Shown here piece by piece: positions 1,322 to 31,350 of a stretch of 39,144 bases of DNA. Numbering within the stretch: position 1 is the stretch's first letter; each line of letters starts with the position of its first letter. Both the position numbers and the translations under genes were made by a program. Source of the DNA: Octopus bimaculoides (taxonomy: Eukaryota). The notes below the pieces were generated by a model. That model worked only from the letters and a program-made list of their open reading frames with translations, did no database searches and was not told the origin of the DNA. The stretch is taken from NCBI RefSeq assembly GCF_001194135.2, contig NC_068981.1, forward strand, positions 187,508,241 to 187,547,384, written 5' to 3'.

Positions 1322-1877
1322 TACATACATGGTGCACTATCTATTCGGGCACATCTGTTCTCAGATATAATTTTGCATTATGTTAGATGTTGTTTGAAGC
1401 ATGCATTTAAAATGGCCGATATTCATAGTAACATACACTTCGCTTGATTTGGTTCGTGTCATTTTCTACATTTGCAATTCATCATTATTACCGCTAACAT
1501 ACATATATTACAGTTCACTTATTATTGTTAGCCAAAATAAGCATTACAAACACGAGTTGAATATGCAAATGAAGTTATAGAAAATAAATTGGATATTTTT
1601 ATATTTCTGTTGTAGGTTTGTTTTTGGTGGTGTTGTTATTGATGTCGTTGGCGGTGGCGGATATTTCTATAATGTATTTAATTTTATATATTTCTATATA
1701 GTTTGTGAAACCCCCCGCTGTAATGAACAGATACACAATTTCATATGCAGTTTCTACAATTTAACCACGTTTTAGTTTTTCACGAAAGATCAGCTATTGT
1801 TGTCGTCATCGTCGCCGTGGTGGTGGTGGTGGTCACTGTGGTGGTGGTGGTCATTCCCTTGGTCGTCTTCGTTGTTA

Positions 1878-2088
1878 TTGTTATTATGTAACACCAGATC
1901 GGTCTCGACTAAGTAGAACTGTGATCAAAAGCAAAGCGTTCCAACCTCCACGACCATCTCAATTTATTTTCATAATGTACAAGGATCTACATTAACTAAT
2001 ATGATCTTTTTTAAGTAATGTCGGAAGTGGTTTCGAAAGAATTTAGCTACTGTTTACAACAGGTCAAGTGATTGTAAAGAGCCTCCAT
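1878..2088 (-). repeat. Interspersed repeat family C copy
   Basis: (TTG/TTA)n then ...gatcggtctcgactaagtagaactgtgatcaaaagc...gaatttagctactgtttacaacaggtcaagtg; reverse-complement match to 10345-10540. Confidence 0.55.
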
Positions 2089-2240
2089 CTAAAAGACTTT
2101 GTGACATTCATTCCTTCGTTAGATTTAATATAAACGACTTATTTATTTATATTTGCAAACCGAAACAAGAGCACGAACTCAAGCTGGAAAATATTTCTAT
2201 TTTAGGAGTTTCGTTTACTCACGTATAGACAGAAATAATA

Positions 2241-2446
2241 TTTATTTAAAATTTTGGCACAAGGCCAGCAATTTCAGGGAAGGGGATAAGTCGATTACAT
2301 CGACCCCAGCGCTCAATTAGTACTTATTTTGTCGACCCTGAAAGGATCGAAAAACAATGTCAGCTTCAGCGGAATTTGAACTCAGAACTTAGCAGATGAA
2401 ATGCCGCTAAGTATTTTGCCCGGTGTGTTAATATTTCTACCAGGTT
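2241..2446 (-). mobile_element. SINE-A copy (tRNA-derived, slightly 5'-truncated) with 12-bp TSD
   Basis: B-box gagttcaaattcc on the minus strand; direct repeat acagaaataata at 2229-2240 and 2447-2458. Confidence 0.8.
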
Positions 2447-2658
2447 ACAGAAATAATAATTATTTCAAATTTTTGCCACAAAGGCAGCTTGGTGGAGGTG
2501 GGGACTAATCGATTACATCGACCGCAGTGTTCGACTAGTACTTATTTTATCGAACCCGAAAGGATGAAAAGCAAAGTCAACCTCGGTGGAATTTGAACTC
2601 AGAACGTAACGACGGGTGAAACACCACTAAGCATTTCGTCCAGCGTGCTAACGGTTCT

Positions 2659-4344
2659 AATTTTTTTTTAATTACCCATGAGGGGCGAACATAGAGGTGA
2701 CAATACACAACATGTGGAGATATACAAACAGGGAAACAAGTTAGAACCAACGTATGAAAAAATGATATGAGAACTGAAATGAAAAATGGAATGAAGCCTC
2801 TCTGCCCCACTTCATAGCAGCTTCATTTATACCTTTTAAACTTCGTTCCCGCTAGAATATCGATTCCAAATTCTTCCACCACTCCCTCATACGTCATAAA
2901 CTGTGGTAATACGTCCCAATCCAATTTCACTTCCCAACACCTTTATCCGCTTTTATATCTCGTTATTTTTTCTTTCTGTTCATCCGAGCACAACACGCAA
3001 CAGTTCCATCCCTTAATATTGTCAAAACTCGTTGTTCCAACTGCTTTAAAGTCTTCCCAAGATAACACTTCTTTACACAATTTTTTCATTTGAGTCATCA
3101 TACATTACTGTGTGGCATTGTTTTTTTTTTGTCTGGTGGGAGTGACTTTGGGACTTCTTGTCTGTTTGTACACTTTTCTGTGTCAGAGAGGGATGGGTAG
3201 GTTTGGTGTCTGTAGGGGGAGGGTGGGCCGAAGAAGGTGTGGGTAGGTGTTGGGTGGTTATGGGGGCTTATCTTTTTCTTTTTCCTATTGTTTCCCATTC
3301 GTTGTCTGTTTCTTTCTTCTCTACTTTTTTCTTCCTCCTTATTTTCTTGCTCTTTCTGAGGTTCTTGTATCTCCGCCATCTTTTTGGTCGGTGAAAAGCA
3401 GTCCACTCTGATGTGGCCCTCCAGGCCACATTTAAAGCATCGAGGGATTCTGCCCTCCACCCTGACACTCATCATCATGTCGTCCATGATTATTGTTTCT
3501 GTAATGTTTTCTAGGGTTTCGGTTGAACCTTGAATAATCATGTCCAGTATCTGTCCCTTCCATATAACACTTTGCGTTTTTGTGGCCTGGATAACCGCTG
3601 AGTTGTCCTCATTTCCCAGAAGGACAGCGGCTGCAATCCAGACCACATCTATCTCCGGCGGAATTCCTTACACCCTAACTCTGGTCAGCGTTGTCCACGG
3701 TAAGTGGGCAAAAGCACCACTTCCTCACTCTTAATGGAAGTCACTGCGTGTTTTTTTGCTGTTGCCGCGTCCTTGAATCTCACCTCCACTACTCCGAACT
3801 TAGTATCTCTCGCAAGGTACACAATTTCATGCTATATTGGTCTTAACGCTTTCTTTATTTGACCCGTGGTCATGACGTCAATTTTTCCTTCAATTATTGA
3901 AAATGTTTTGTACAAAATTGTTCTTTCTTTGATATTATTAAATGTCTCTTGCGGGNNNNNNNNNNNNNGGGGGGGGGTGCAATTTAACGTCAAATCCATC
4001 CCGACTTAAATAGATTTTTGTAATTTTCAAATTCACCAATATTAATATAATTTTCCTGGCACTTTGCCACGTCCGCAAAGTGTCTCTTTTCTTCATTTAA
4101 TTTTTCGTCCATTTTCTTGACCGTTTTCAAAACATTTTTCCTCTGAAGATGACATATCTGAAAAGCTGAAGACTTCTTCAGGCATTTTTTTCACTAATGA
4201 GGAGGGGAAGCACAAACTAATTGCTGCAAAGCAGCACAAAAACAGTTAATTGAAGTGTTTAAAACACTAAAACAAAATAAACGATGTTAACACTGTGTAA
4301 ATACCGTCAAAAATGACTCACGTAGACCTTGAAAAATACCGGAA
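2659..4344 (-). mobile_element. Non-autonomous, ORF1/gag-only non-LTR retroelement (HAL1-like), apparently full length
   Basis: TSD gcgtgctaacg(g/a)tt(c/t)t at 2643-2658 and 4345-4360; 3' A-tail (T-run 2661-2669 on plus); ~160-bp 5' and 3' UTRs; single disrupted ORF; no RT or endonuclease. Contains a 13-nt N gap at 3956-3968. Confidence 0.8.
2823..4185 (-). pseudogene. Disrupted gag/ORF1-like nucleic-acid-binding protein (~450 aa) with a CCHC zinc knuckle
   Basis: ATG at 4185 (MPEEVFSF...), then ...EKRHFADVAK..., ...KFGVVEVRFKDAATAKKHA..., LTRVRV*GIPPEIDVVWIAAAVLLG..., RVEGRIPRCFKCGLEGHIRVDC (C-x2-C-x4-H-x4-C), a Lys/Glu-rich linker and ...GIDILAGTKFKRYK* (TGA 2823-2825). Several stops and frameshifts. 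Confidence 0.8.
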
Positions 4345-4384
4345 GCGTGCTAACGATTTTGCCAGCTCACCGCCTTGCAGGCAG

Positions 4385-4521
4385 AAATAATCCTTTCTAT
4401 TGAAAACACAAGGCCTGAAATTTTGGCGGAGGGGACTAGTCGATTACATCGACCACGAAAGGCAAAGTAGAACTAAGCAGAATTTGAACTCAGATCGTAG
4501 CGACGGGCGAAATACCACTAA
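4385..4521 (-). mobile_element. SINE-A, 5'-truncated and internally deleted
   Basis: aatcctttctattgaaaacacaaggcctgaaattttgg...aatttgaactcagatcgtagcgacgggcgaaatacc. Confidence 0.75.
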
Positions 4522-5088
4522 ACAATAATAAACGGAAATATATTTATATACCGTTCGTGAATACACATACAGATGGACATTAACATGTGCATAACAGCAA
4601 TTAGTGATAGAAGACTAAATATTTCTATATGGCATCAGAATAAATGAAGAAAAACTCTAATTTCTATTCTAATTACATTATTGATTTTTTTCTGTCTTAT
4701 TTGAAGTCTCTAACATACACGCTGATTTTCACGTACATTTATACACCAATCTATGCATGCATGTATCAGTACGAGTATCTACATAATTCTCTGTCTTTCT
4801 TCCTCTCTCTCTCTCTCTCTCTCTTTCTTTCCCTCTCTCTCTCTTTCGTTCTCTCTCTCTAAGTTCAATAAAGATTGTTTTATAATTGGTTTTATCAATT
4901 GAGATTTTGTCATGCTGGAACACTGCCACAACTTTTTGAAGTTCTTCACTAAATTATGTTTCCTCTGTTGTTTTGCTAATGATATTATTGACGCGTAGCT
5001 TGAACTTACTATTTGATTTTATAGATTGTCTATAATTAAAGTACTCATTAATATTCGTTCTGTTACTGTTGCTATTGTATTAGCTATA

Positions 5089-5700
5089 GGCGCAGGAGTG
5101 GCTGTGGGGTAAGTAGCTTGCTTACCAACCACATGGTTCCGGGTTCAGTCCTACTGCGTGGCACCTTGGACAAGTGTCTTCTACTATAGCCTCGAGCTGA
5201 CCAAAGCCTTGTGAGTGGATTTGGTAGACGGAAACTGAAAGAAGCCCGTCGTATATGTGTATATATATATATATNNNNNNNNNNNNNNNNNNNNNNNNNN
5301 NNNNNNNNNNNNNNNNNNNNNNNNNNNNNNNNNNNNNNNNNNNNNNNNNNNNNNNNNNNNNNNNNNNNNNNNNNNNNNNNNNNNNNNNNNNNNNNNNNNN
5401 NNNNNNNNNNNNNNNNNNNNNNNNNNNNNNNNNNNNNNNNNNNNNNNNNNNNNNNNNNNNNNNNNNNNNNNNNNNNNNNNNNNNNNNNNNNNNNNNNNNN
5501 NNNNNNNNNCTGTGTTTGTCTCCCAGAATCGCCTGGCAACTGATGCTGGTGTGTTTACATCCCCGTAACCTAGCGGTTCGGCAAAAGAGACGGTTAGAAT
5601 AAGTACTAGGCTTACAAAGAATAAGTCCTGGGGTTGATATACTCGACTAAAGGTGGTGCTCCAGCATGGCCGCAGTCAAATGACTGAAACAAATAAAAGA
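5089..5700 (+). mobile_element. SINE-B (tRNA-derived, internal TA/TG microsatellite spanning an N gap)
   Basis: ggcgcaggagtggctgtgggg...ggttcagtcc (B-box)...gaagcccgtc-(TA)n-gap-...ctccagcatggccgcagtcaaatgactgaaac; more than 10 related copies in the window. Confidence 0.88.
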
Positions 5701-5740
<40 letters not shown>

Positions 5741-7194
5741 GTAGTAGTAGTGGTTGTTGTTGTAGTTGTTGTTGTTTAGTCCCAGGTCAACCCTTTACTT
5801 TTAGGCATGTGATCACAACTAGGATGGTGCCATTGCTATAAGCACAAGTACCCAACATCGCATCCCAAAAATTACCGTTCGGCTGATTGACACAGAATCT
5901 CCCCAAAACAACATACTACATCCCCTGTTACTGTAACTTCTCTGGAGAAGATACAACATGTCCCGATACTGTTAGTATCACCAGATAGAGTACTGGAGTC
6001 GATTTGTTCGGTGCCCCAGCTTGGCCGCTGTCTGATGACTGAAAGAAGTAAACCAAAGGATAAACAAGAACCATTGATAACAACTCTTCCCTTAAAACTC
6101 CACTAAACACACTACACATGATTCTCCCCATTTTGAATATTTATCCTCGTTGTACACATTTCCTTTAGCCGTCAATTTCCAAATGTTCAAGAGAAACGGT
6201 AAAAGCATCAACATCTCCGATCTTAGACTCGCTCGAAAGCTATGAGTACAACCTATTTCCCCAGATTAAAAAAACGTTGTTTTAACATTTTCCATTCTAT
6301 CTCTTTGTAAATCAATGAATACATTGTTTTGTCTGTATCGCTTTCTATTTAAGACGACAGTAAAGTATTATTTATTTATGCGCTCTTTTAAATCCTAGCC
6401 AGGCTCATGGGCCCGGTTTCTATGGCGTATTCCCCCCCCCCCAGCTAGACGGGACGCCAGTACATCGCAGTTTTACTCAAGAAACAGTGAGAGTTGGGGC
6501 GAAAGATTCCAACAGGGCGAAAGATTCCACACAGTAAGGTATTACTTGAGTGATATTTGGTTGCTATTTCTAGCAGGTCGAACGAAGCGGTCACATAACG
6601 GCCCCTTTACTGGTTACTTATTTGTATTGTTTAAGTCAAGTGAACGCCATTCACATATCTTAAGATATAACTTAATAGACATTCATACATAAATGTAAAG
6701 CGGTCACGTCTAAATCACAAACTGACCTCTGACCTTATCTCGAGGCTATGACTCAGTTTCAATCGAAGGTCTTTCGCCACTCTTCTTCCCGTTATTACAC
6801 CGGACACAAAATGTTTGTGCGTATCTGGTTTTAGTATCATAGAGTGTCACAGTTTGTGGTGCAGTGTAATCAATTCCAGTTAAAATATTTCCGTATTCTC
6901 TTCTTTGCATTTCTAGTACACAATACACAACCATTTTGATAATAACATTGGCATTTTAATTTCGTTAGACACGTTTAATAAATGCAAAGATTCTGGAGGC
7001 TTGCCCTTCGGTGACGTACATAGCATGCAGTCCATTGCCTACATTTCAGTGTTCAACCTTTAGAAAAACAGGTTAAGTACCAACAAAATATTTTACCGGA
7101 AAACCAGACACGTGATTTCCTGTTGATGTTGAAGGCTTGTTAGCTTATAATATCATCAACGATGCTGAATGTTTGGGCTGAGAGGAAAGAGAAA

Positions 7195-7199
7195 GAGAA

Positions 7200-7270
<71 letters not shown>
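7195..7270. repeat. (GA)n microsatellite
   Basis: Direct reading. Confidence 0.95.
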
Positions 7271-7274
<4 letters not shown>

Positions 7275-7321
7275 ATAGAGAGAAGGGAGAGATAGTGTAT
7301 GGAGAAATTACATACAATATT

Positions 7322-7465
7322 AAATTCTACTCTAGGCACAAGGTCAGAAATTTTGGGGGAGGGGGCCAGTCAACTAAATCGACCCCAGTACGCAACTGGT
7401 ACTTAATTTATCGACTCCGAAAGAATGAAAAGCAAAGTCGACCTCGGCGGAATTTGAACTCAGAA
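7322..7465 (-). mobile_element. SINE-A, 5'-truncated
   Basis: tctactctaggcacaagg...gtcgacctcggcggaatttgaactcagaa. Confidence 0.85.
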
Positions 7466-7480
7466 ATTACCCAGAAATAA

Positions 7481-7690
7481 GAGGGAGTCTCTTTGTAGTA
7501 GCTCGACTTGGTAAAGATAATAGTCAATTTCTCTTAAACTATGTTATACTTTCTTCAAAAAGAAAAAAAAATGAGTAATACATTGGACAACCGAGCTTCA
7601 GGATACGCAGAAAAAGACGGCAGATGACGACTTTGAATTACAGGTGTGATATATCAGAAATGACCAAAGGTGGAGAAAGGCTAAACAACA
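7481..7690 (+). repeat. Interspersed repeat family C copy
   Basis: gggagtctctttgtagtagctcgacttgg...aggctaaacaacatc; similar to 10345-10540. Confidence 0.5.
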
Positions 7691-8379
7691 TCACTATCAT
7701 CACCAGCACCACCAATAACAATAATAACAACAGCAACAAAACACCTCTGTAGTTATAAGGAGAATAAACTGAAATTTCAACATGATAGGGATCTCAGTTA
7801 CATCATCATACGTGGTTGACTTAAATCGTTGCCTATCATTTAGGACTTGCGGGTCTTTAGCGAAGTTCACTGTGTTACAAGTATTTGAATCAAGTTCAAA
7901 CTCTCGCAATAGAGTTGAGTTTTCGCGCGTTCAGGTTTCTGGTTTGGGTCCGAGAAGACTTCTATTTACCCACCAGTATCCCTACTGATACTTGAAACTG
8001 TCGTGGCACCGCCCTTCTTTCTCTTGCCAAACCATTATAATAATATTTTCGTACGAGTTCCTTATAATTTGTTTAAATCAGGAAAAACTTTTTAAAACAA
8101 TTAACAGTCTCTAGACTTCCCCGGTCTCATTATCTGGATGATGTAATTTTGGCCTGCGTTACTCCCGTTCTCTATAAGGCAAAGTCAATGTGATTGGTGT
8201 CAATATTAACACAGAAATTCGAATGGCGAATGTAGCTTCATAAAATGAGAGCAACAAATGTCAGGACAATTTTATCCATCAGGTGGAGACAGAAGATACT
8301 TTGATGGTGGATTTAGCAACTTCATTGCTCCTCCACCAAAAAAAGCAAGGAAGAACTTTTTTGGAAATATTGAAACAAA

Positions 8380-8523
<144 letters not shown>

Positions 8524-8756
8524 CCAAGTATGGTTACATTGTTATCAGCAACATACATGATCTTCCAAGGAAGATTAGATTCTACTCCAACGATTCTCAG
8601 CCTTTTGTTATCGTGACCGATTTTTGGAAAATCAATAATCATCCGTGACCTTTTTCTTTTTTAAAAATGTTTAATTAAAAATCAATTTTCCGAAGATATA
8701 TATGCCAATTGATTGCACTTAACAATTGATACTTTTCTTGGCGAAATATTCGTATA

Positions 8757-8895
8757 GCCGCTGGAGTGGCTGCTTCCTAACCACATCGTTCCGAGTTCAA
8801 TCTCACTGCGTGGAACCTTGGGTAAGTGTCCATCAATTCTTGACAATCGGTGTTGGTGTGTTTACGTCCCCGTAACTTAGCATTTCCGCAAAAAG
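8757..8895 (+). mobile_element. SINE-B, internally deleted remnant
   Basis: Head gctggagtggctg...gagttcaatctcactgcgtgg joined to the 3' part gtgtttacgtccccgtaacttagc. Confidence 0.75.
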
Positions 8896-9075
8896 ACACT
8901 GATATCAATTATCTCAGAGAATCTGCTTTCAACATGCCTTCAGACATCCACTTCAAAATAGATAAAGTAAAAAAGTGTACGAGAAATGAAAAATATGGAC
9001 TGGCCAAAAGACACCTGACAGTTAATCAATTAATCAAAACCCATTTAATTCCAAGAATAAAACAGAATTATTTTA

Positions 9076-9211
9076 CAGTTCTATATTTAAGAGATGAGGA
9101 ATTATGTACATTATTTATATTATTTACATTCGACGGATATTTGTCCTCATCTTGTTTGTTGTTAACAACAAACAAGATGAGGACAAATATCCGTCGAATG
9201 TAAATAATGTA
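9076..9211. mobile_element. Fold-back insertion containing a 90-bp perfect palindrome with a 12-bp flanking direct repeat; probably a Penelope-like element terminus
   Basis: 9119-9163 is the exact reverse complement of 9164-9208; agaattatttta at 9064-9075 and 9212-9223. The Penelope assignment is from recall only. Confidence 0.7.
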
Positions 9212-9478
9212 AGAATTATTTTATATGAGACTTCGCTAATAAATAGACAAATGTTGAAAAAATAATAATTTTAATGGTAATTTCAACTCACAACATTCAA
9301 TTATTAAACATTCATAACTGGAATGAATAAATAAAATTAAATATTAAGTATTTGTGGAATTTTGATTTACTGTCGGGTGACTTATGGCTAACTTTGTATA
9401 TGAAAAAAATATTTCATAAAAAAAGTATATATATTAAAAAAAAAAAGACTTTGTTTTAGGAATCTGTTNNNNNNNNNN

Positions 9479-9518
<40 letters not shown>

Positions 9519-10344
9519 CATATACATGAATATGTACACACATACGATATAAAAGTGTAACTGGAGCAACCAACCAACCAACCAACTAACAAATCTTTAT
9601 ACCGGCTGTTATAAATATTTCGAGACAGATATTACTTTTCAATGAAGTGCACAAATAGACAGACGTAATTTTGTTAATTTTCGCTAATTTCATTATGCTT
9701 GAACATTCTTTGTTTGTTTGCAAGCGATATAAAATAAGAGTTGCTGTTCTAGCTGTCATCTTTGTCTTGTCGAGATGGGAACGACAAGATGACGACTACA
9801 AGAATGAAACGACCACCACTTAACTTTAAAACGAAAGCAAATACACAGACATTGTAACTCTAAAGAAATGAATCACGAATATTTTACAAAGGATGAAAGA
9901 AAACTGTGTTTGTTAATATATAAATCCCATGTGAAAACGACCGATGTTTATTATAAAGGAGAATAAAAGAAAATAAAAATCAGATCGAAGATAAAAATAA
10001 TCACTTTCCAGTCCCTTAGGCTCCCTCCTGGTGACCTACACATCTATCATATTGTAAAAACTGCAACGATTAAATTTCCTCTTTAGGAATGAACACACTC
10101 GAGTCTTGTACAATTTTGACTGTTTGTAAAGCTGAAGTAAGTCTGACCTTTGAGTCCTGTTTCGATTTCTAAGGCGCTACTGCTACTACATATAGAAACA
10201 CCCAAAGATAACATCTAAAGACGGCCATTCGACTGATCGCCAAAAAGACACTTTTATAAACAAAATATAAATGTTTATTCACAGCCACACTGGTTCGTAT
10301 CTTTCTGCTTCTCTAGATGAGACTATAAAGGCTCTGCGGAGCGA

Positions 10345-10540
10345 AACAATAGACTCCCTATGTGGTCGCTCGATTTGTTAAAAATAGCAGCCTAATCTCC
10401 TTTGAATCACGTCAAATCCATTTGCGAGACAGAGGAAAGGATAAATTAAGTAATATGAAACCATGGTCGTGGTTGGAAGGCTTTTGATCATGTCTTGTCA
10501 CTCAGGGATGATCTGGATCTAATCAACAACAGCAACAATT
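10345..10540 (+). repeat. Interspersed repeat family C copy ending in (CAA)n
   Basis: gactccctatgtggtcgctcgatttgttaaaaatagcagcc...tttgatcatgtcttgtcactcagggatgatctggatctaatcaacaacagcaac. Confidence 0.6.
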
Positions 10541-10572
10541 GCTGTTACAGCAACTATTCCTGCAGTAACAAT

Positions 10573-10573
10573 A

Positions 10574-10633
<60 letters not shown>
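10573..10633. repeat. (TAC)n microsatellite
   Basis: Direct reading. Confidence 0.95.
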
Positions 10634-11827
10634 GTCTAGTGGCACACTCCCCCCATTCGTCTAGATAGCACCTGTCGCACCTTCTGGGGTCTCAGCTGCC
10701 AGATCCGGAACTAAAACACTTTACTGAATCCTTCCTCCCGCCACAACTTATTTCTTTCTGAAATTTCCTCTACGCCATTAATCTTTTGCAGACATCAGCC
10801 TACACATGTGTAAATTGAATTGAACACCAACTGCTTCGATCTTATCACAAATCATACGCATTCTGCCTCTGTTTATAAGGAAGTATTTTTTTTTCCTTTC
10901 CTCTCGTCTGTTTTATATTATTCAAAGATTGTTCATCTTGCATCCGGCAACGAATGTTGTGAAGAGATTTTCTTTCGTTTCTCCTTCTTCGTGTATTTTC
11001 AAAGTAGGATTGTTCTTTTACTTTCATCGTAGCAGGATATGAGAATTCTATCAAAGTTGCATATATTACACTTGACATTTTCTGTATTTTTCTCGCTTGA
11101 TCTTTGTCATGCCAAATTATTTTTGTATCGATAGCATTGTTATTTAACTGGGTCACGATGTTACTAGTCTACAATATGCTCAATTCTCATTATCGAATAT
11201 AAGGCATTCTTTCAGTTAGATTTCTCTTGATTAACAATAGTACATTCTCTGGGCTTTTAAATAGATGCTTCTGTGTAATTCGTTTTTATTTTTTATTCAC
11301 TTTGAAAGAGACAAAAAAACTGTTGCGCTTCTGGTCACTTATAATGCTTGCAAAATATTGATCCAACGAGAGTTTCTTGGATAAATCAAAATGTTATTCT
11401 AAGATCATGTGTGAAATAATGTTCAACGATAAATTATTAATTGATGAGAAAATTCGACCTTTCAGGTCGGTGTTTCTTCGTTGAATCATTCATCCATTTG
11501 CAGCTAATTAAGTGAAGCAGAACGAACTCGTGCATAGATTTCTGTATTAAAATATCTCTCAGTACAAAAGAACTAATATCCTTTTGGCCGTTGAGATTTC
11601 ACTCTGAGAAAACTTATTCGGTGTGACAAGTTATTATTTCAACATATTCTGCATGCACAGATTTACTATTAAAAAAAAATATCATCTCAAAATTTTAATA
11701 CAAGATATCACCATCATACCAAATGTATACAGACTGTTAGAAGGCAAGGTGCTGTGGAATTGTCTGAGATAAAATCTCTTCATAGACTTATGTGTTAAAA
11801 ATAAAATGAAATATATATACATATATA

Positions 11828-12150
11828 GGTGCAGGCGTGGTTGTGTGGTCAGAGACCTGCTTCTCAAACACCCGGTTCCGGGTTCAGTCCCACCGCGTGG
11901 CACCTTAGGCAAGTGTCTTCTACTATAGCCTCGGACCGACGAAAGCCTTGTAAGTGGATTTGGTAGACAGAAACTGAAAGAAGTCCGTCGTGTATATGTA
12001 TATATACTTACGTGTGTGTCTTTGTATCTGTGTTTATCTCCCACCATCGCTTAACAACCGATGTTGGTGTGTTTATGTCCCCGAAAATTAGCGGTTCGGT
12101 AAAAGAGACCGATAGAATAAGTAGTAGGCTTACAAGGAATAAGTACTGAA
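11828..12150 (+). mobile_element. SINE-B, near full length
   Basis: ggtgcaggcgtggttgtgtgg...ggttcagtcccaccgcgtggcacc...gaccgatagaataagtag. Confidence 0.88.
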
Positions 12151-12393
12151 AATAAGCTAAAATTGGAATAGAGTTAAGTTTTAGTAAGATAAGATGTGAA
12201 TAATTTTGAGGAAAGTGAATGAATACCAGGGTTAAGTTAAAGTGATACATACATCATTGAATACTACGTTATAGATCAGGTATCGAAGTTCCAAAGTGGT
12301 TGCGATGGACGGGGAAGGGGATCTAAAAAAAGTTTGGGTGGAAAATTGTAATTAGAATTGAGTTCTAATTGATATTAATAGTTTTAGTTTCTA

Positions 12394-12990
12394 GATGGCA
12401 GAATCGTTAGCACGCTGGACAAAATGCTTAGCGGTACTTCGTCCGTTTGTATGTCCTGAGTTCAAATCCTGCTGAAGTCGACTTTGATTTTCATCCTTTC
12501 GGGGTCAATAAAATAAATACCATTCAAGTACTGGGGTGGATGTAATCGACTATCCCCCTACCCCAAAGTTTTATGTCATGTGCCTATAGCAGAAAGGATT
12601 GATTTTAGCTTATAAAAGGCGGGGACCTGGCAGAATGGTTATCTCACCGGAAAAATGCTTAGTAGTTTCTTTCGACTTTTCTTTCTGAGTTCAAATTCCG
12701 CTGAGGTCGATGTTACTTCATCGTTTCGGGGTTGATAAAATAAGTTCCAGTTGAACACTGGAAATTGCTTGCTTTGTTTCAAAATTTGCAAGCAATAGTT
12801 TTTGCTACAAACATAAGCAGAAGGTGTGAAATTCGAGGGAGGATTATAACCAATTATATCGACCCTATGCGGAAGAAGGAAAGAGAAAGTTGACTGCAGC
12901 AGGATTTGAACTCAGGGCGTAAAGAGTAGGAAGAAATGATGCGAGGTAAGTTATCTGCGTCTCAAGCAATGTTTCCAAGCCACCGCCCTT
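12394..12990. mobile_element. Cluster of three decayed SINE-A copies (+ 12394-12601, + 12618-12760, - ~12800-12990)
   Basis: Repeated tggcagaat...gagttcaaat... heads and gtcgac/atcgac bodies. Confidence 0.75.
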
Positions 12991-13049
12991 ATTCACACCA
13001 GAATTAAAGCGCATAGCTTTCTTCTTTCTTCTCTGAGAGAATATTAATA

Positions 13050-13464
13050 TCCTTTTCTACTCTAGGCACAAGGCCCGGAACTTTTGGAGAGAGGGCCAAT
13101 GGATTAGATCGACCCAGTATTTCACTGGTACTTAATTTACCGACCCCGAAAGGATGAAAGGTAAAGTCGACCTTGGCGGAACGTGAAGACATGAAATACT
13201 GCTAAGCATTTCGTCCGGCATACTAACGTTTCTTATTTCTTTATTGCCCACAAGGTGCTAAACATAGAGGGGACAAACAAGGACAGACAAAGGCATTAAG
13301 TCGATTACATCGACCCCAGTACGTAACTGGTACTCAATTTATCGACCCCGAAAGGATGAAAGGCAAAGTCGACCTCGGCGGAATTTGAACTCAGAACGTA
13401 AAGACAGACGAAATACCACTAAGCATTTCACCCGGTGTGCTAACGTTTCTGCCAGCTCGCCGCC
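13050..13464 (-). mobile_element. SINE-A with a tail-swapped SINE-A variant inserted in its head (tandem dimer)
   Basis: Duplicated target (c)gtgctaacgtttct at 13219-13233 and 13436-13450. The inserted copy ends in tail ...tttgtcccctctatgtttagcaccttgtgggcaataaagaaata (minus) instead of the normal ...gccttgtgcctagagtagaaaagg tail. Confidence 0.85.
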
Positions 13465-13479
13465 TTCCATTCTTATAAA

Positions 13480-13752
13480 TATTCTTTTCTACTCTAGACA
13501 CAAGACCCGAAATATTTGGGGAGGGGGCCAGTCGATTAGATCGATCCCAGTACGTAACTGGTACTTAATTTATCAACCACGAAAGGATGAAAGGCAAAGT
13601 TGTCCGCGTTGGAAATTGAACTCAGGACGTAAAGACATACGAAATACTGCGAAGCATTTCGCCCGACGTGCATTTCTTATTTCTTTATTGCCCACAAGGG
13701 ACTAAACACAGAGGGGACAAACGACGTGCTAACGTTTCTGCCAGCCCGCTGC
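13480..13752 (-). mobile_element. SINE-A with a 45-bp 5'-truncated tail insertion (13678-13722) in its head
   Basis: gacgtgctaacgtttct at 13723-13739, partially duplicated at 13665-13677 (gacgtgc-atttct); the insert matches the tail at 13234-13278. Confidence 0.8.
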
Positions 13753-13911
13753 TTTAGAGAATATAACTATGAAGATATGATTGTTAGATGTTATGCAAGT
13801 AAAAGTTCATTAGAAAACTTCAGAACCCGAGAAGGTATGAAGACAAAACGTCCTGACAGAAGTTGAGACTGAAAATACTGGAGTTAAATATTTTGCTGTA
13901 GTATCATTTAC

Positions 13912-14242
13912 TTTTAACTGTTTCAGTCGTTAGACTGCGGCCATTCTGTGATATCAGCTTGAAGGAGTTTTAGTTGAATGAATCGACTCCAATACTTATG
14001 TTTTGAAGCCTGGTACTGACACTGTCGTTCTGTTTTGTCGCACAGCTAAGTTACAGGGACGTAAATACACCAATACCGGTTATCAAGCGGTGTTGGAGAC
14101 AAACGCACACACACAGAGGCTTCTTATAGTTTCTGCCTACCAAATCCATTCACAAGGCTATGGTCGAAGAGACTTGCCACGCAGCAGGAATGACACCGGA
14201 ATCATGTTGGAAAGAAAACTTCTTACCACACAGCCACGCTGT
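13912..14242 (-). mobile_element. SINE-B, decayed
   Basis: ctgtttcagtcgttagactgcggccatt...ctaccaaatccattcacaaggc...ttcttaccacacagccacgc. Confidence 0.75.
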
Positions 14243-14357
14243 GAAAATATATATTCAGGGTTGTGTCAAATATGTGATTAATGAAAACAATTGCGAAAAT
14301 ATTCAACGCAGACGAAACCGGAATTTCTGAAACTAAATGGTACAAGCAAAAATTGTA

Positions 14358-14735
14358 CGCGATTTGTGTTCATAACACTCGTGACTTACGGGTTCACCGG
14401 TTCATAGGTTTAGGGAATATCGCTTAAAAGGACGAGTGGTTCTCCAGTGGCGAAAAGCAACAGCGATCGGATATGTATGCTCGAATCTGTCAGACAATAT
14501 TAAGAATGAATAGATACGTTATTGATTCGATTCTCGCTGTTCTGCGCGCATCCCATGAATTATTATCTGTTTGACAAGCGTCAGCACGCATCATTAAATA
14601 GTTTATTTGCTGATTCCGAGAAACAAGACTTTGGTCTTTTGAGATTCATGAGGAAACAAACAACGAGGTTAAAACAACATAGAATCTCGAAGTTTCCTTA
14701 CACCAGTGAATTACGTGTTATGAACACAAATCGCA
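14358..14735. mobile_element. MITE, 378 bp, 20-bp perfect terminal inverted repeat (TIR), TA TSD (Tc1/mariner-type)
   Basis: gcgatttgtgttcataacac (14359-14378) and gtgttatgaacacaaatcgc (14715-14734); TA at 14356-14357 and 14736-14737. Confidence 0.72.
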
Positions 14736-14946
14736 TAAAAGGAGGACAGTGTTCCCCCGTTGGTAATCAGATATTTACGTTTCAAATCTGCCAAAATGAA
14801 TTAAGAATAAGCAGAGACGATTAAGAGAGCATTCATCAATCAAAAGACGAAGTTACAGTCAGCAGTATGAGAGGAATCTGGGGGAAATGCTCTGCCTGAA
14901 TGTTCTAGTGATTTCAGTGGCTTCAAAAATCCAGTGTAGAAAATCA

Positions 14947-15290
14947 TTATTGTCTCCACTTTAACGAAGGCAGAAGTATTGTTTTCAGTCGTGTTTGTTT
15001 GTTAGTTTGTCCGTGGACAAGATATCTCAAGAACCACTGAATGAATTCGGATGAAACTTTCAGGGATGTTTGGCCTCGTGACTAGCACGAACTGATTAGA
15101 TTTTGGGTTCGATCTGATACCAGACAAGGATTCTGGATTATTTTTCCTGTTTATTACTTATTTAATTTTTGAGAGCGGTCGAGTTCATTTTTAGTATTCT
15201 CGTTTGTGAGAGCAGTCGAGTTTATTTCAGATATTCTCATTCTAAAAATCATCTCCGGCTAATCGTTGAGAGGACATTGGTGTTGCTTTA
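14947..15290 (+). mobile_element. Helentron-associated non-autonomous element (HINE/DINE-1-like), 3'-truncated
   Basis: ttattgtctccac...gtattgttttcagtcgtgtttgtttgttagtttgtccgtggacaagatatctcaagaaccactg...ggatgaaactttcagggatgtt...gattagattttggg matches the DINE-1/HINE architecture (sub-terminal repeat, GTYT-type microsatellite, conserved core). No 3' hairpin seen. Confidence 0.6.
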
Positions 15291-15315
15291 TTAAAATTAA
15301 TACTACTAGAAGACA

Positions 15316-15610
15316 GACTTTTCCTCCGAGGATGTTGATTTGAGAAAAGTTCGTGAAATATTGGAGTTGTCACATTCGAAAGACTTAAGTGACGAGGATC
15401 TCATTGAAATCAAGTATGAAAAGAGAGTATATGAAACAAGAAGGAGGACAGGACCGACCAAACGGAAATTGCGTCTAAGTATATAATAATGAAAGAACTA
15501 ACGAAGTCGGTCAAACAACGATGTAAAGATAAAGTGAAATGCTGAGTGAGAGAGAGGCTCTGTCGGCGAAGTCGAGAGAATCAAATTGCTTGTTATATGC
15601 ACACTTACTC
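15316..15610 (+). pseudogene. pogo/Tigger (TIGD1-like) transposase C-terminal relic
   Basis: DFSSEDVDLRKVREILELSHSKDLSDEDLIEIKYEKRVYE... and later ...RSRENQIACY; resembles the Tigger C-terminal ELLESHSEELTNEELLELE...IACY region. Confidence 0.55.
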
Positions 15611-15624
15611 TTTTGCTACTTTAC

Positions 15625-15790
15625 CAATTTTAGTCATTGAAATGCGGCCAGGCTGGAGTACTACCTTGAGGAGCTTTAATCGAACAAATCAATCCCAGGA
15701 TTTATTTTAAGTTTGATGATTATTCTACCGGTTCTCTTTTGCCAAAGCGCTAATTAACAAGAACGAGAACAAACTAACACCGGTATCACA
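15625..15790 (-). mobile_element. SINE-B 3' half
   Basis: ttttagtcattgaaatgcggccaggctggag...ggttctcttttgccaaagcgctaa. Confidence 0.7.
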
Positions 15791-15836
15791 CACATACACA
15801 TGTACACACAAAGACACATACATGCATATATATATA

Positions 15837-15974
15837 TTAGGCAGGATGAGATAACAAAACCAAGGCTGTCAGGAGATTTCAGGACATTTATGAAATATTT
15901 CATTATAAACTATTTCATTATAAATGTACTGACAACTCCTCACAGCCTTGGCTTTGTTGTCTGAGTCTGTCTAA
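15837..15974. mobile_element. 138-bp fold-back MITE (~55-60-bp imperfect TIRs) within (TA)n
   Basis: ttaggcaggatgagataacaaaaccaaggctgtcaggagatttcaggacattta versus reverse complement of the right end ttagacagactcagacaacaaagccaaggctgtgaggagttgtcagtacattta; (TA)n on both sides. Confidence 0.78.
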
Positions 15975-16356
15975 TATATATATATATGCATGCTAATACA
16001 AGACCCACATTAGACACCTCACTCATATCAATATCGAACCAAGAGTTTAACTACTGTCTGTCCATACCACTTAGCTTAGTTAGCGTTACCTGACACTCTT
16101 TGGGTCTTCTAGATACCTCTGGACAGGGACAACTGATAAAGGGGAATATTCTTTATGTTGCATGTCTCGTTTCTGTGTTTGTTTTTTTCGTTGTTCGAAA
16201 AAAGTTCGTTTTCTGTTTTCGTCTTTATGTTTTCGTTTCTCATTGTGTTTAACGTTTTTTTGATGTCCTGTACCCATATATGCATATATGTATACATATA
16301 GATGTAGGTATGTACATATATGTATGGATATATGCATATATTTATATATTATTTAT

Positions 16357-16394
<38 letters not shown>

Positions 16395-17102
16395 GGTCTT
16401 CCACACAGTTTCCATCTATCAAATTCAGTCACTAGACATTAGTAGGCTTAGAGCTACACTAGCAGACGTTTTCCCAATGCACCGAATCCAAAACTGCGTC
16501 GTTACGAAGGGAACTTTTTATAGCTCAGCAGCCATAGGAAAACAAATCAGGCTCTTCAAAGATTTTTCTTTAAAATGGAATGAATAACAGTAAATCAAAT
16601 TTTTTAATTTTTTTTATATTTATCTCCACGTAAAAATGATGTTATATTAGAACGAAAAATACCGCGATATTTACTATCAGAGAACTTCTCATATGGACTT
16701 AAGATGCATACAGGCATTCATGTTTATATCGCTAGCGAGAGATAATCGTCTGCTACCGTCGCCGGAACTATTAGATCACGGGATTTCAGCCTTCCTTGAC
16801 CTCGTCAATGGTAGATGTCCACGTCTAGAGATAACAGCGATTTCTTCGTCAGCGATGTATATAGAACCCCAATGTGTATTCAGGCACTGCTATCGCAAGT
16901 AGCCATTGAATTTATTAATACAAATAATTAACAGCGACAGAAGCAGTGTTAATACCAAAAAGTAAACACAACATCCATTTTTAAGTGGGCGATAAACATT
17001 ACCTTTTGGTACTGATACTGCTTCTAATGCTATTAATTGCTTGTTTATTACTTTCCTTCGGATTAAGTATAATTATTCTTATTCATTATTAGATTTCATT
17101 AA

Positions 17103-17498
17103 TTTCGTCTGTCTTTATGTTCTGAGTTCAAATTCTGCCGAGGTCGACTTTGCCTTTCATCCTTTCGGGGTCGATAAATTAAGTACCAATTGCATACTGT
17201 GGTCGATCTAATCGACTAACCCCCTCCCCCAAAATGTCGTGCCTTGTGCCTAGAGTAGAAAAGATTAGTATATCTTCTTAGGCGGCGAGCTGGCAGAATC
17301 ATTAACGCACCGGTTGAAATGCTTCGCGGTATTTCATGTGTTGTTACGTTCTGAGTTCAAATTCCGACGAGGTCGACCTTACCTTTCATCCTTCTGGGGT
17401 CGATAAATTAAGTACCAGTGAAATACTGGAGTCGATGAAATCGATTATACCCCTCCCCCAAATTTCAGGCCTTGTGCTTATTGTAGAAAGGATTATTA
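17103..17498 (+). mobile_element. Two head-to-tail SINE-A copies (17103-17268 5'-truncated; 17281-17498 full length)
   Basis: ggcggcgagctggcagaatc...gagttcaaattcc...gccttgtgcttattgtagaaaggattatt. Confidence 0.88.
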
Positions 17499-27867: not shown

Positions 27868-28026
27868 GATAAGCGCAGTGTGGTAAGAAGCTTGCTTCCC
27901 AACCACATAGTTCTGGTTTCAGTCCCATACAGCCTGGCACCTTGGGCAAGTATCTTCTACAATAGCATCGGGCCGACCAAATCCTTGTGAGTGGATTTGG
28001 TAGACGGAAACTGAAATAAGCCCGTC

Positions 28027-28057
<31 letters not shown>

Positions 28058-28965: not shown

Positions 28966-29566
28966 GTAAGGGATCATATTTCTTAGATTGTTAGATTAAA
29001 AATTGTATCGCCTTTGGCAGTATAATATAATTTATCATTTCTCTCTCTCTCTCTCTCTCTCCATGATTGAAGTTAATTGCTTGATGTTACACAATTATAC
29101 ATTTATTTTTTTTTCATCATGTTATCTTTCATAGTCCTTTCCTCCCTTGGATACATATACAAATATAATCTCTCTTATTTGTTCTCTTTTTCTTTCTATA
29201 GTTTATTTTTCTGTTTTTTTTTTAAGTGACAATCTTTATTCTATTTACTACATATATAGGGGAAAATGCGTTTCCACTAATGCAATATTTTGCTTACAGA
29301 GACTGAAGAAAATTTTACCTGTGCAATAGTTTATTATGTAATCCGTTGAAACGTACGTATTAAATTCATTGGAAACAGCAGTAATAGGTCTTGTGGTTAT
29401 TCTATATTATACAGTTCCTTTCAATGGCAATTTGACTTATCCCTGCTTGGACAGTTATAACGGAATACGGGTATAGGAGTGGAATGAAGATCTGAACACT
29501 GAGTCGAAAATGTTTGGTAAAGTGTGCTGCATGAAGACACAGTACTGAATATGTGTATACATCTAA

Positions 29567-31129: not shown

Positions 31130-31302
31130 GGCGCAGGTGTGGCCATGTGTTTTTGTGGTAAGAAGCTTGCTTCCTAACCATATGGTTCCGGATTCAGTCT
31201 TACTGCGTGGCATCTTGGGCAAGTGTTTTCTACTATAGCCTCAGGCTATAGTAGAAAGCTTTGTGAGTGCATTTGGTAGACGGAAACTCAATGAAGCCCG
31301 TC

Positions 31303-31346
<44 letters not shown>

Positions 31347-31350
31347 GTAT

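What the first reader, a model, noticed from the sequence alone, without database searches (positions are those of the whole stretch)
2643..13755. Candidate SINE-head-targeting retrotransposition system: three independent insertions at the same nucleotide of SINE-A with a shared 3' tail
Seen in sequence: on the minus strand, three different inserts interrupt SINE-A directly after the A-box (TGGC|AGAAACGTTAGCACG). Each duplicates ~15-17 bp of that target (2643-2658/4345-4360; 13219-13233/13436-13450; 13665-13677/13723-13739, the last with a small deletion in one copy). The 3' junctions align: ...gggtaattaaaaaaaaatt|agaaccgttagc, ...gggcaataaagaaata|agaaacgttagt, ...gggcaataaagaaata|agaaat. The inserts share a ~45-bp tail (plus: attacccatgaggggc-gaacatagaggtgacaa vs attgcccacaaggtgctaaacatagaggggacaa). 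Established: TSDs, A-rich 3' ends and 5' truncation mark target-primed reverse transcription. Tx1-clade LINEs (Keno/U2, Dewa/tRNA arrays, Kibi, Koshi) are sequence-specific, and SINEs share 3' tails with their partner LINE. Inference: an autonomous, probably Tx1/L1-clade LINE with a site-specific endonuclease uses the abundant SINE head as a safe-harbour target and mobilises at least two non-autonomous passengers. I do not recall this being described for cephalopods.
Basis: partly seen in the sequence, partly recalled or inferred. Interest (0 to 1): 0.9.

Follow-up and report, generated by a model that had tools for sequence, protein, structure and literature searches.

The report
LINE relatives repeatedly hitting an octopus SINE
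Three retrotransposon insertions really do sit at the same nucleotide of an abundant octopus SINE, made by an L1/Tx1-like LINE group and its dependent elements, but this is a strong site preference of a known kind rather than a strict or new targeting system.

Summary
Three inserts (window 2659-4343, 13234-13431, 13678-13721, minus strand) interrupt three SINE-A copies at TGGC|AGAAAC. They carry 17-19 bp duplications and share a 3' tail.

The inserts are:
- a 1.7-kb ORF1-only "half-LINE" that is decayed, not a 5'-truncated LINE;
- a SINE-A derivative ("S2") that has swapped its tail for the LINE tail;
- a 44-bp tail stub.

I fetched about 150 kb of Octopus sinensis, O. bimaculoides and O. vulgaris DNA. 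In it the same tail ends full-length 5.2-kb LINEs that encode ORF1 (CCHC), an APE endonuclease, RT and zf-RVT. Their closest solved structure is human L1 ORF2p.

An unrelated O. sinensis locus holds a fourth insertion at exactly the same SINE-A position, with an 18-19 bp TSD. Of 13 non-tandem tails in 191 kb, 8 lie inside SINE-A, which covers 4% of the DNA (P≈7e-9). Four are at site 1 and three at a second fixed site (|GGTATTTC).

The targeting is not exclusive. Other copies sit in (ATT)n, in tandem LINE arrays or in unique DNA. Argonauta copies are dispersed.

Verdict: a real site preference, resembling TE-targeting Tx1 LINEs. Tx1 clade membership and endonuclease specificity remain untested.

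The parts
2453..2658 (-). Host SINE-A copy 1, 3' part: from SINE position 15 (AGAACCG...) to tail 1. It includes the downstream TSD copy at 2642-2658.
   Evidence: blastn to the SINE-A query gives 86% identity, starting at AGAACCG. The sequence was read.
2659..4343 (-). Insert 1 ('c1'): a 1.69-kb ORF1-only non-autonomous LINE derivative ('half-LINE'), decayed by frameshifts and stops.
   Evidence: The ORF1-like reading is split over three frames. It matches O. bimaculoides proteins P0001 and P0002. It has the same size and layout as elements in L001 (1598 bp) and L002 (1692 bp), and is homologous to full-length LINEs only in ORF1 and the last 60-140 nt.
2659..2705 (-). 3' tail of insert 1: TTGTCACCTCTATGTTCGCCCCTCATGGGTAATTAAAAAAAAATT.
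   Evidence: Tail HMM E=3.8e-10, but this copy is one of the HMM seeds. Independent evidence: 68% identity over 140 nt to the 3' UTR of LINE copy 3 in L002.
3359..4133 (-). ORF1-homologous region of insert 1 (RRM-like part plus zinc knuckle), interrupted by stops and frameshifts.
   Evidence: tblastn of P0001 and P0002 gives three collinear pieces in frames -1, -2 and -3.
3398..3439 (-). CCHC zinc knuckle (CFKCGLEGHIRVDC) of the ORF1-like protein.
   Evidence: Pfam zf-CCHC, E=5.8e-4 and 20.3 bits, just under the 20.8-bit cut-off. The motif was read.
3956..3968 (.). Assembly gap inside insert 1, next to a C/G homopolymer.
   Evidence: P0001 residues 113-214 align collinearly from 4002 to 3688 across the gap, so no sizeable sequence is missing. 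The frame across the gap is unknown.
4344..4374 (-). Host SINE-A copy 1, 5' part: head GGCGGTGAGCTGGC (4361-4374) plus the upstream TSD copy (4344-4360).
   Evidence: a head-only hit at 4374-4345.
13042..13233 (-). Host SINE-A copy 2, 3' part: from AGAAACG to tail 1. It includes the repeat copy at 13215-13233.
   Evidence: The flanking ATATT[T/A]ATA repeats tie this tail to the head at 13432-13466.
13234..13431 (-). Insert 2 ('c2'): an S2 element, i.e. a SINE-A body joined to the LINE tail (tail at 13234-13303).
   Evidence: It is collinear with SINE-A up to ...TAATCGACT and then continues with the 70-nt tail. Further S2 copies are at L001 6001-6164, L002 419-649 and L001 18016-18222, and there are many in Argonauta.
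13432..13466 (-). Host SINE-A copy 2, head plus upstream repeat copy (13432-13450). It could equally be read as the head of a full-length S2.
   Evidence: The ambiguity is explained in the report.
13470..13677 (-). Host SINE-A copy 3, 3' part, including the downstream TSD copy at 13664-13677 (which has a 4-nt deletion).
13678..13721 (-). Insert 3 ('c3'): a 44-nt 5'-truncated stub of the LINE/S2 tail.
   Evidence: 42/45 identical to the c2 tail. Tail HMM E=1.4e-12, but this copy is an HMM seed.
13722..13752 (-). Host SINE-A copy 3, head (GCAGCGGGCTGGC) plus the upstream TSD copy (13722-13739).
   Evidence: Both TSD copies share the GTCG variant.

Best explanation
The three inserts are ordinary target-primed reverse-transcription products. 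They come from one octopod group of L1/Tx1-like LINEs ('LINE-X') and from elements that borrow its machinery.

LINE-X is about 5.2 kb. It encodes ORF1 (an RRM-like region plus a CCHC knuckle) and an ORF2 with an APE endonuclease, RT and zf-RVT. It ends in a conserved tail, TTGTCCCCTCTnTGTTnGCCCCTTGTGGGYAATAAAGAAAT(A). The tail holds a small hairpin and an AATAAA signal.

Three kinds of dependant carry this tail:
- 1.6-1.7-kb ORF1-only 'half-LINEs' (insert 1);
- S2, a version of the abundant tRNA-related SINE-A that has exchanged its own tail for the LINE-X tail (insert 2);
- severely 5'-truncated stubs (insert 3).

Integration is strongly biased towards SINE-A and, within it, towards fixed nucleotides. 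Site 1 is TGGC|AGAAAC in the D-loop/A-box region. A second site is GCTTAGY|GGTATTTC.

I infer that the first nick is made on the opposite strand at 5'-GTTTCT|GCCA-3' by the LINE-X endonuclease. The match between the target AGAAAY and the tail end AGAAAT may help. TSDs of 16-19 bp then arise as in L1/Tx1 elements.

Shown: the structures, the shared tail, the coding capacity of relatives, and the recurrence of the site in an unrelated locus of another species.
Inferred: which autonomous family supplies ORF2, and whether the endonuclease or RNA-target pairing sets the site.
For: - TSD-flanked inserts sit at one SINE-A nucleotide in three window copies.
- A fourth event is in O. sinensis locus L001. 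An ORF1-only element only about 60% identical to c1 lies between ...GCTGGCAGAAACGTTAGCACGCCG| and |CAGAAATGTTAGCACGCCGG. The locus is not orthologous to the window.
- Relatives encode Exo_endo_phos, RVT_1 and zf-RVT. Their best PDB matches are human L1 ORF2p, at 9e-40 for the RT part and 1e-14 for the EN part.
- The tail HMM finds 18 tails in 191 kb. The new ones were found de novo.
- 8 of 13 non-tandem tails are inside SINE-A, which covers 4.0% of the DNA (P=6.6e-9). Site 1 was replicated in the independent loci (1 of 10, P≈0.003).
- Site 2 is hit three times, once with a clean 16-bp TSD.
- Interrupted SINE copies mostly carry AGAAAC, while intact copies mostly carry AGAATC (3 of 4 versus 2 of 20; my Fisher calculation gives P≈0.02).
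- One relative is flanked on both sides by (ATT)n. Others form tandem arrays or sandwich a TSD, as target-specific Tx1 elements do.
- The tail hairpin has one compensatory pair.
Against: - The preference is not exclusive. Five of 13 non-tandem tails are outside SINE-A, and S2 copies are found at several kinds of site.
- About ten Argonauta tails have unrelated flanks.
- No full-length autonomous copy was seen at site 1.
- Sites 1 and 2 share no obvious sequence motif, so one endonuclease specificity does not explain both.
- The sample is 191 kb, not a genome. The loci were chosen because they carry ORF1 homologues.
- Ten of the 18 tails were used to build the HMM.
- c2 and c3 lie in neighbouring SINEs and may be one event.
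Confidence: 0.68

Rival explanations
1. One ancestral insertion was copied, rather than several independent hits. A SINE-A master or local copy that already carried the insert was multiplied by tandem duplication, gene conversion, or retrotransposition of the composite SINE.
For: - c2 and c3 sit in two adjacent SINE-A copies that share a sandwiched flank (ATATT[T/A]ATA) and the same AGAAAC subfamily.
- The host SINEs are 84.6% identical and the tails 93.3%. This difference is not significant (my binomial estimate P≈0.07).
- A SINE with a 44-nt insert could still be transcribed by Pol III and spread as a subfamily.
Against: - c1 and the L001 element are 1.6-1.7 kb and rich in T-runs, so they are unsuited to Pol III.
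- They are only about 60% identical to each other, differ from c2/c3, and lie in different loci and species with different outer flanks.
- Deriving c3 from c2 needs a deletion that ends exactly at the TSD boundary.
Confidence: 0.12
2. Homing by RNA-target pairing rather than by endonuclease specificity. The AATAAA signal lies about 10 nt before the element end, so transcripts run into the flanking SINE-A before cleavage. The transduced SINE sequence, or the AGAAAT tail end, then anneals to other SINE-A copies and fixes the junction. Each source copy thereby passes its site on to its progeny.
For: - AATAAA is inside the tail in nearly all copies, and there is no poly(A) in most DNA copies.
- The target AGAAAY repeats the tail end AGAAAT. 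AGAAAC-type SINE copies are the ones hit.
- Two distinct hot spots exist within one SINE family.
- The paper that describes TE-targeting Tx1 elements discusses co-transcription with the target as a factor that strengthens target-specific integration (PMC4494074).
Against: - Site 2 (GGTATTTC) is not complementary in the way priming would need.
- The junctions keep both AGAAAT(A) and AGAAAC, so the microhomology is not consumed.
- No transcript 3' ends were available to show read-through.
Confidence: 0.15
3. Chance, combined with a general AT-rich or SINE-rich neighbourhood or an assembly artefact among collapsed SINE copies.
For: - The window is an older, gap-rich assembly with 8 gaps.
- SINE-A copies are dense and often tandem.
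Against: - Nucleotide-exact recurrence with TSDs, in three assemblies of three species, is not what misassembly gives.
- 8 of 13 tails lie in 4% of the DNA (P≈7e-9), and the site was replicated independently at P≈0.003.
Confidence: 0.03

Closest known systems
Transposon-targeting Tx1-clade LINEs and their SINE partners (Tx1L into Tx1D in Xenopus; Tx1-Mar with SINEU into Mariner-N4_AMi, and other Tx1 families into LTR or Harbinger elements, in crocodilians; Kojima 2015, PMC4494074)
   Same: - An APE-type LINE group whose members prefer a fixed position inside another interspersed repeat.
- Non-autonomous partners with the same tail share the target.
- TSDs are about 16 bp.
- Tandem copies sandwich a TSD.
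- Sister families target microsatellites; here one relative sits in (ATT)n.
   Different: - The target here is a tRNA-related SINE head.
- Two hot spots are used.
- The preference is far from exclusive in my sample.
- Tx1 clade membership has not been shown by phylogeny.
SINE-LINE partnership through a shared 3' tail (stringent type; Ohshima and Okada)
   Same: S2 carries about 45-70 nt homologous to the LINE-X 3' end, including a small conserved hairpin. The same body occurs with a different tail (tail 1). This is the tail-swapping known for CORE-SINEs.
   Different: Recognition of the tail by the RT was not tested. The hairpin support is weak: 4 pairs, of which one covaries.
HAL1 ('half-L1') ORF1-only derivatives of mammalian L1
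   Same: These are elements of defined length (1.6-1.7 kb) that keep the 5' UTR, ORF1 and the 3' end of the LINE but lack ORF2. Several diverged lineages exist.
   Different: They are in a cephalopod and have a type-I (RRM-like plus CCHC) ORF1. The window copy is dead.
Octopus tRNA-derived CORE-type SINEs (OR1/OR2/OK; Ohshima and Okada 1994, cited in PMC4824008 and PMC4758252)
   Same: SINE-A is an abundant octopus SINE about 225 bp long. It has a B-box-like GAGTTCAAATTCC motif and, from memory, a body resembling the MIR/CORE domain.
   Different: I had no reference sequence of OR1, OR2 or OK. The identity of SINE-A with any of them is a lead, not a test.

Membership tests
Non-LTR retrotransposon insertion by target-primed reverse transcription | Target-site duplications flank the insert | tested here: met
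   TSD lengths: c1 17 nt, c3 18 nt (4-nt deletion in one copy), L001 element 18-19 nt, L004 stub 16 nt, L002 copy 1 16 nt. The c2 repeat cannot be told from SINE homology.
Non-LTR retrotransposon insertion by target-primed reverse transcription | Fixed A-rich 3' end with variable 5' truncation | tested here: met
   All copies end in AATAAAGAAAT(A) or an A-run. Truncated copies are c3 (44 nt), the L004 stub (about 60 nt) and the L001 S2 from SINE position 68. c1 is full-size for its class.
L1/Tx1 superfamily of LINEs | ORF2 with an N-terminal APE endonuclease, RT and a C-terminal Cys-rich domain; a separate ORF1 | tested here: met
   L002 and L003 relatives have Exo_endo_phos, RVT_1 and zf-RVT downstream of the ORF1 homologue. 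Their best solved relatives are human L1 ORF2p. This was seen in relatives, not in the window.
Tx1 clade (as opposed to L1 proper) | The RT groups with Tx1 reference elements in a phylogeny | not testable with these tools
   No Tx1 reference sequences were obtainable. Indirect evidence only: the O. vulgaris repeat annotation lists L1-Tx1 as the only L1-like LINE class (PMC13282606).
Target-specific LINE (Tx1L, Tx1-Mar, Keno, Kibi type) | The large majority of copies of a family lie at one defined target sequence | tested here: inconclusive
   Of 13 non-tandem tails, 4 are at site 1, 3 at site 2, 1 elsewhere in SINE-A and 5 elsewhere. The copies could not be sorted by autonomous family, and the sample is 191 kb.
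Target-specific LINE (Tx1L, Tx1-Mar, Keno, Kibi type) | The encoded endonuclease nicks the target sequence specifically | not testable with these tools
   This needs a biochemical assay.
Target-specific LINE (Tx1L, Tx1-Mar, Keno, Kibi type) | An autonomous full-length copy is present at the target | tested here: not met
   Only ORF1-only elements, S2 and stubs were found at site 1. Full-length copies were in (ATT)n or in tandem arrays. The sample is small.
Stringent SINE-LINE tail partnership | The SINE 3' tail is homologous to the LINE 3' end | tested here: met
   The S2 tail matches LINE tails, for example 83% over 47 nt to L002 copy 3.
Stringent SINE-LINE tail partnership | A conserved 3' stem-loop supported by covariation | tested here: inconclusive
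   A 4-bp hairpin (GCCC/GGGU) shows one CG-to-GC compensatory pair between Octopus and Argonauta.
tRNA-derived SINE (SINE-A as OR/CORE type) | A recognisable tRNA-like head with A and B boxes | tested here: inconclusive
   A B-box-like GAGTTCAAATTCC motif and a D-arm-like GCTGG...TTAGC are visible. ARAGORN and Rfam report no tRNA.
HAL1-like ORF1-only elements | ORF1 is kept and ORF2 is absent, with defined ends shared with the LINE and several copies of similar length | tested here: met
   Three elements of 1686, 1598 and 1692 bp are homologous to full-length LINEs in ORF1 and the 3' end only.

The most novel reading that the evidence does not exclude
Site choice may be inherited through the RNA rather than set by the endonuclease. 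The polyadenylation signal sits inside the tail, so each copy would transcribe a few bases of its own SINE-A flank. That flank would guide the next insertion to the same nucleotide of another SINE-A copy. This would give self-perpetuating 'site lineages' (site 1, site 2) within a half-million-copy SINE, and would continually create SINE-LINE chimeras such as S2, which is the raw material of tail swapping.
Probability: 0.15. Interest if true: 0.7.

Novelty: new member of a known kind. Interest (0 to 1): 0.42.

Why it matters
Octopus genomes are unusually rich in SINEs, and their LINE partners are poorly described. This finding links one SINE-A tail variant (S2) and a class of ORF1-only elements to a concrete L1/Tx1-like LINE group. 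It also shows that this group tends to land at fixed nucleotides of the commonest SINE.

If a genome-wide count confirms it, three things follow:
- A SINE head joins the list of 'safe-harbour' targets used by Tx1-like elements.
- It helps explain the nested and dimeric SINE structures that complicate cephalopod repeat annotation.
- It gives a natural system for asking whether the endonuclease or RNA-target pairing sets LINE target choice.

It does not change the general picture of retrotransposition.

Tried and rejected
- Exact-pattern scans of the metagenome collection for the tail and for the SINE-A core found no octopus DNA.
- A protein query built from the antisense SINE/junction reading frame found nothing.
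- Look-ups of the two closest ORF1 homologues (P0001, P0002) had no DNA on record.
- The route that worked was an exhaustive HMMER search with the ORF1 domain, followed by contig look-ups of octopus hits.
- Two look-ups returned only short Logan contigs from runs SRR118693xx (L008-L016). These look like transcripts of ORF1-only elements of another cephalopod. I saw neither the tail motif nor SINE-A when reading L008 and L011 in full and the ends of L012-L016, but I did not scan them with the tail HMM. They add nothing on targets.
- Pfam finds only a borderline CCHC knuckle in ORF1.
- Long HMMER hits carrying Helitron, SNF2 or aBig domains are fusions or chance knuckle matches, not LINE ORF2.
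- The ORF2 homologue search returned almost only unnamed proteins, so it gave no clade name.
- ARAGORN and Rfam found no tRNA or other RNA family in the window.

Models I considered and rejected:
- The 5'-truncated SINE was inserted next to a pre-existing tail. This is contradicted by the SINE heads and TSDs upstream of c1, c3 and the L001 element.
- Template-switch chimeras produced the structures. That needs two mid-template jumps at the same nucleotides in independent events.
- A 997-aa ORF in L007 is ORF2. It has no Pfam hit and an equally long ORF on the opposite strand.

Full report
**1. The observation.**
On the minus strand, three SINE-A copies are each split at the same place.

- Copy 1: the head GGCGGTGAGCTGGC (4361-4374) and the repeat AAAATCGTTAGCACGCT (4344-4360) are followed by a 1685-bp insert (2659-4343). 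Then come AGAACCGTTAGCACGCT (2642-2658) and the rest of the SINE.
- Copy 2: the repeats are 13432-13450 and 13215-13233, and the insert is 13234-13431.
- Copy 3: the repeats are 13722-13739 and 13664-13677, the latter with a 4-nt deletion. The insert is 13678-13721.

All three 3' junctions fall at TGGC|AGAAAC, 14|15 nt from the SINE 5' end. A blastn survey finds about 14 SINE-A copies in the window, and only three copies of the shared tail. All three tails are at this junction.

**2. The assembly gaps.**
Only the gap at 3956-3968 lies inside a feature. An O. bimaculoides homologue (P0001) aligns collinearly from 4002 to 3688 across it, with the N-run standing in for a few residues. Nothing sizeable is missing, although the frame across the gap cannot be known. 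The gaps at 5275-5509 and 9469-9478 lie in (TA)n runs between the features.

**3. What the inserts are.**
Most SINE-A copies end in 'tail 1' (...GGCCTTGTGCCTAGAGTAGAAAGGATTATT). Insert 2 is a SINE-A body that continues into a different 70-nt end ('tail 2'), so it is a SINE-A subfamily, which I call S2. Because the insert is itself SINE-A, its 19-nt 'TSD' cannot be told apart from SINE homology. The flanking ATATT[T/A]ATA repeats nevertheless tie the head at 13432-13466 to the tail-1 end at 13042, which favours a host SINE interrupted by S2.

Insert 3 is a 44-nt stub of tail 2.

Insert 1 carries a decayed gene for a protein with an RRM-like region and a CCHC knuckle (CFKCGLEGHIRVDC, 3398-3439). 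It is broken by stops and frameshifts over three frames. Its only close relatives in the word-indexed database were three O. bimaculoides proteins. This also identifies the window as Octopus DNA.

**4. Getting related DNA.**
The DNA collections hold no octopus sequence, and the closest homologues had no contigs on record. An exhaustive HMMER search with the ORF1 domain gave 407 hits. Several of these are annotated proteins of O. sinensis, O. bimaculoides, O. vulgaris and Argonauta hians. Their contigs could be fetched:

- L001-L003 from O. sinensis;
- L004, L006 and L007 from O. bimaculoides;
- L005 from O. vulgaris;
- L017 from Argonauta.

Together with the window, the Octopus DNA totals 190,863 bp.

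**5. The autonomous relatives.**
In L002, L003 and L005 the ORF1 homologue is followed by reading frames with Exo_endo_phos, RVT_1 and zf-RVT domains. The units are 5.2-5.3 kb long and end in tail 2. Against the PDB, the RT part matches human LINE-1 ORF2p best (8.9e-40, against about 1e-24 for R2). The endonuclease part does too (1e-14).

This group is therefore in the L1/Tx1 superfamily. I could not build a tree with Tx1 references. The only indirect pointer to Tx1 is that a curated O. vulgaris repeat annotation lists L1-Tx1 as its only L1-like class, with 13 recently active families (PMC13282606).

Insert 1 is not a 5'-truncated LINE. Three ORF1-only elements of 1686, 1598 and 1692 bp (window, L001, L002) match the full-length LINEs only in ORF1 and in the last 60-140 nt. 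They form a 'half-LINE' class analogous to mammalian HAL1.

The tail holds a 4-bp hairpin with one compensatory pair, just upstream of an AATAAA signal.

**6. Where the tails sit.**
A profile built from ten tails finds 18 copies in the Octopus DNA. The junctions are listed.

| Location | Copies |
|---|---|
| Site 1 (TGGC\|AGAAAY of SINE-A) | Window c1, c2, c3; the ORF1-only element of L001 (...GCTGGCAGAAACGTTAGCACGCCG\|element\|CAGAAATGTTAGCACGCCGG, an 18-19-nt TSD) |
| Site 2 (GCTTAGY\|GGTATTTC of SINE-A) | An S2 in L002; a 60-nt stub in L004 with a clean 16-nt TSD; the element of L007 |
| SINE-A, antisense orientation | One S2 |
| (ATT)n on both sides | One full-length LINE |
| Head-to-tail LINE arrays | Five tails in L002 and L005 |
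| Unique or AT-rich DNA | Three, one of them sandwiching a 16-nt TSD with the next LINE |

SINE-A covers 4.0% of the sequence, yet it holds 8 of the 13 non-tandem tails (binomial P=6.6e-9). Using only the loci that did not prompt the hypothesis, one site-1 hit among ten tails has P≈0.003. L001 is not orthologous to the window, and its element is only about 60% identical to c1.

Counted from the target side, 4 of about 24 SINE-A copies that retain the site are interrupted there. Three of those four carry AGAAAC, whereas about 18 of 20 intact copies carry AGAATC or AGAATT. My Fisher calculation gives P≈0.02.

In Argonauta, about ten tails end in ...GAAATCTAT. Most belong to S2-like SINEs, and they have unrelated flanks. 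The LINE-SINE partnership is therefore old, and the SINE-A bias is not a property of the whole group.

**7. Independence of the three window events.**
c1 is clearly separate from c2 and c3. It is a different element with a different tail variant, sits 10 kb away, and is too long and T-rich for Pol III.

c2 and c3 lie in adjacent SINEs. The hosts are 84.6% identical with several indels, and the tails are 42/45 identical. This leans towards younger, separate insertions but is not significant (P≈0.07). One event followed by duplication and a deletion remains possible for that pair. With L001 included, there are at least three independent site-1 events, by at least three element lineages.

**8. 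Mechanism.**
Shown:
- TPRT hallmarks;
- a shared LINE tail;
- coding capacity in relatives;
- nucleotide-exact recurrence.

Inferred: the LINE-X ORF2 protein nicks 5'-GTTTCT|GCCA-3' on the opposite strand and primes on the tail. The ORF1-only elements and S2 are copied in trans, which would explain why diverged non-autonomous lineages share one site.

The main alternative is that RNA-target pairing sets the site. AATAAA lies about 10 nt before the element end, so transcripts probably include some flank, and the target AGAAAY repeats the tail end AGAAAT. Site 2 does not fit simple priming complementarity, and sites 1 and 2 share no clear motif. I leave this open.

**9. Comparison and novelty.**
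The closest described systems are Tx1-clade LINEs that prefer a fixed position inside another transposon and whose SINEs share that target. These include Tx1L into Tx1D, Tx1-Mar with SINEU into Mariner-N4_AMi, others into LTR or Harbinger elements, and Kibi and Koshi into microsatellites. Tandem copies sandwiching a TSD are also described for them (PMC4494074).

The octopus case works in the same way. Its target is a SINE head, its preference is looser, and it has two hot spots. My full-text searches found no description of it in cephalopods, but Repbase and Dfam could not be consulted. I rate it a new member of a known kind, of moderate interest.

**10. Limits.**
- The sample is 191 kb, chosen through ORF1 homologues.
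- Tail copies could not be assigned to autonomous families.
- No autonomous copy was seen at site 1.
- Clade membership and endonuclease specificity are untested.

Noticed in passing
window 32128-32577; 17102-17497; 12393-12761; 2237-2658 with 4385-4524: Ordinary (tail-1) SINE-A copies often stand as head-to-tail pairs. The same 10-17-nt flank occurs before, between and after them (for example ATTATTCAACCAAC three times). This suggests the partner LINE of tail 1 re-uses regenerated target sites, or that SINE-plus-TSD units duplicate in tandem.
   Followed up: partly
L002 4203-20850 and L005 about 4400-16200: Full-length 5.2-5.3-kb LINE copies stand in head-to-tail arrays, separated by only about 20-90 nt of conserved spacer. 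In O. vulgaris (L005) the ORF1 copies are 99.7-100% identical. In O. sinensis (L002) the ORF1 copies are 78-93% identical to P0010 and two others only 42-55%.
   Followed up: partly
L003 9720-9780 and 15344-15375: A full-length relative (ORF1 = P0018) is flanked on both sides by (ATT)n. This is a microsatellite target of the kind known for the Tx1-clade Kibi and Koshi elements.
   Followed up: partly
window 5085-5267, 11682-12047, 14106-14254, 27878-28043, 29549-29708, 31147-31350, 31635-31853: A second abundant repeat of about 200-250 bp is present in every fetched Octopus locus. At least three window copies (5085-5267, 27878-28043, 31147-31350) directly abut a (TA)n run. Four of the eight assembly gaps in the window adjoin (TA)n runs on one or both sides. 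Two more fall in (TG)n and (TTC)n.
   Followed up: partly
L007 11302-14305: A 3-kb stretch between an ORF1 homologue and a LINE tail is open for about 1000 codons on both strands and has no Pfam match. It is probably a stop-free internal repeat rather than ORF2.
   Followed up: partly
L017 (Argonauta hians) 1477-3274 and 12600-15310: Ten tail copies lie in 22 kb, most of them attached to a CORE-like SINE body and ending in ...AGAGAAATCTAT. An S2-type SINE seems to be a dominant repeat in Argonauta and is dispersed without a common target.
   Followed up: partly
window 3363-4133 versus protein P0001 (UniProt A0A0L8H3A6_OCTBM): The database protein P0001 follows the out-of-frame reading of the ORF1 remnant in its C-terminal third. 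It looks like a conceptual translation of a decayed element copy rather than a real gene product.
   Followed up: no
L011-L014 (Logan contigs from runs SRR11869384-94): Near-identical 1.69-1.70-kb contigs carry an intact 294-aa ORF1 homologue and an A-rich end. They recur in several sequencing runs, which suggests that an ORF1-only element is expressed in some cephalopod. I did not see the Octopus tail motif in L011 (read in full) or in the ends of L012-L014; they were not scanned with the tail HMM.
   Followed up: no
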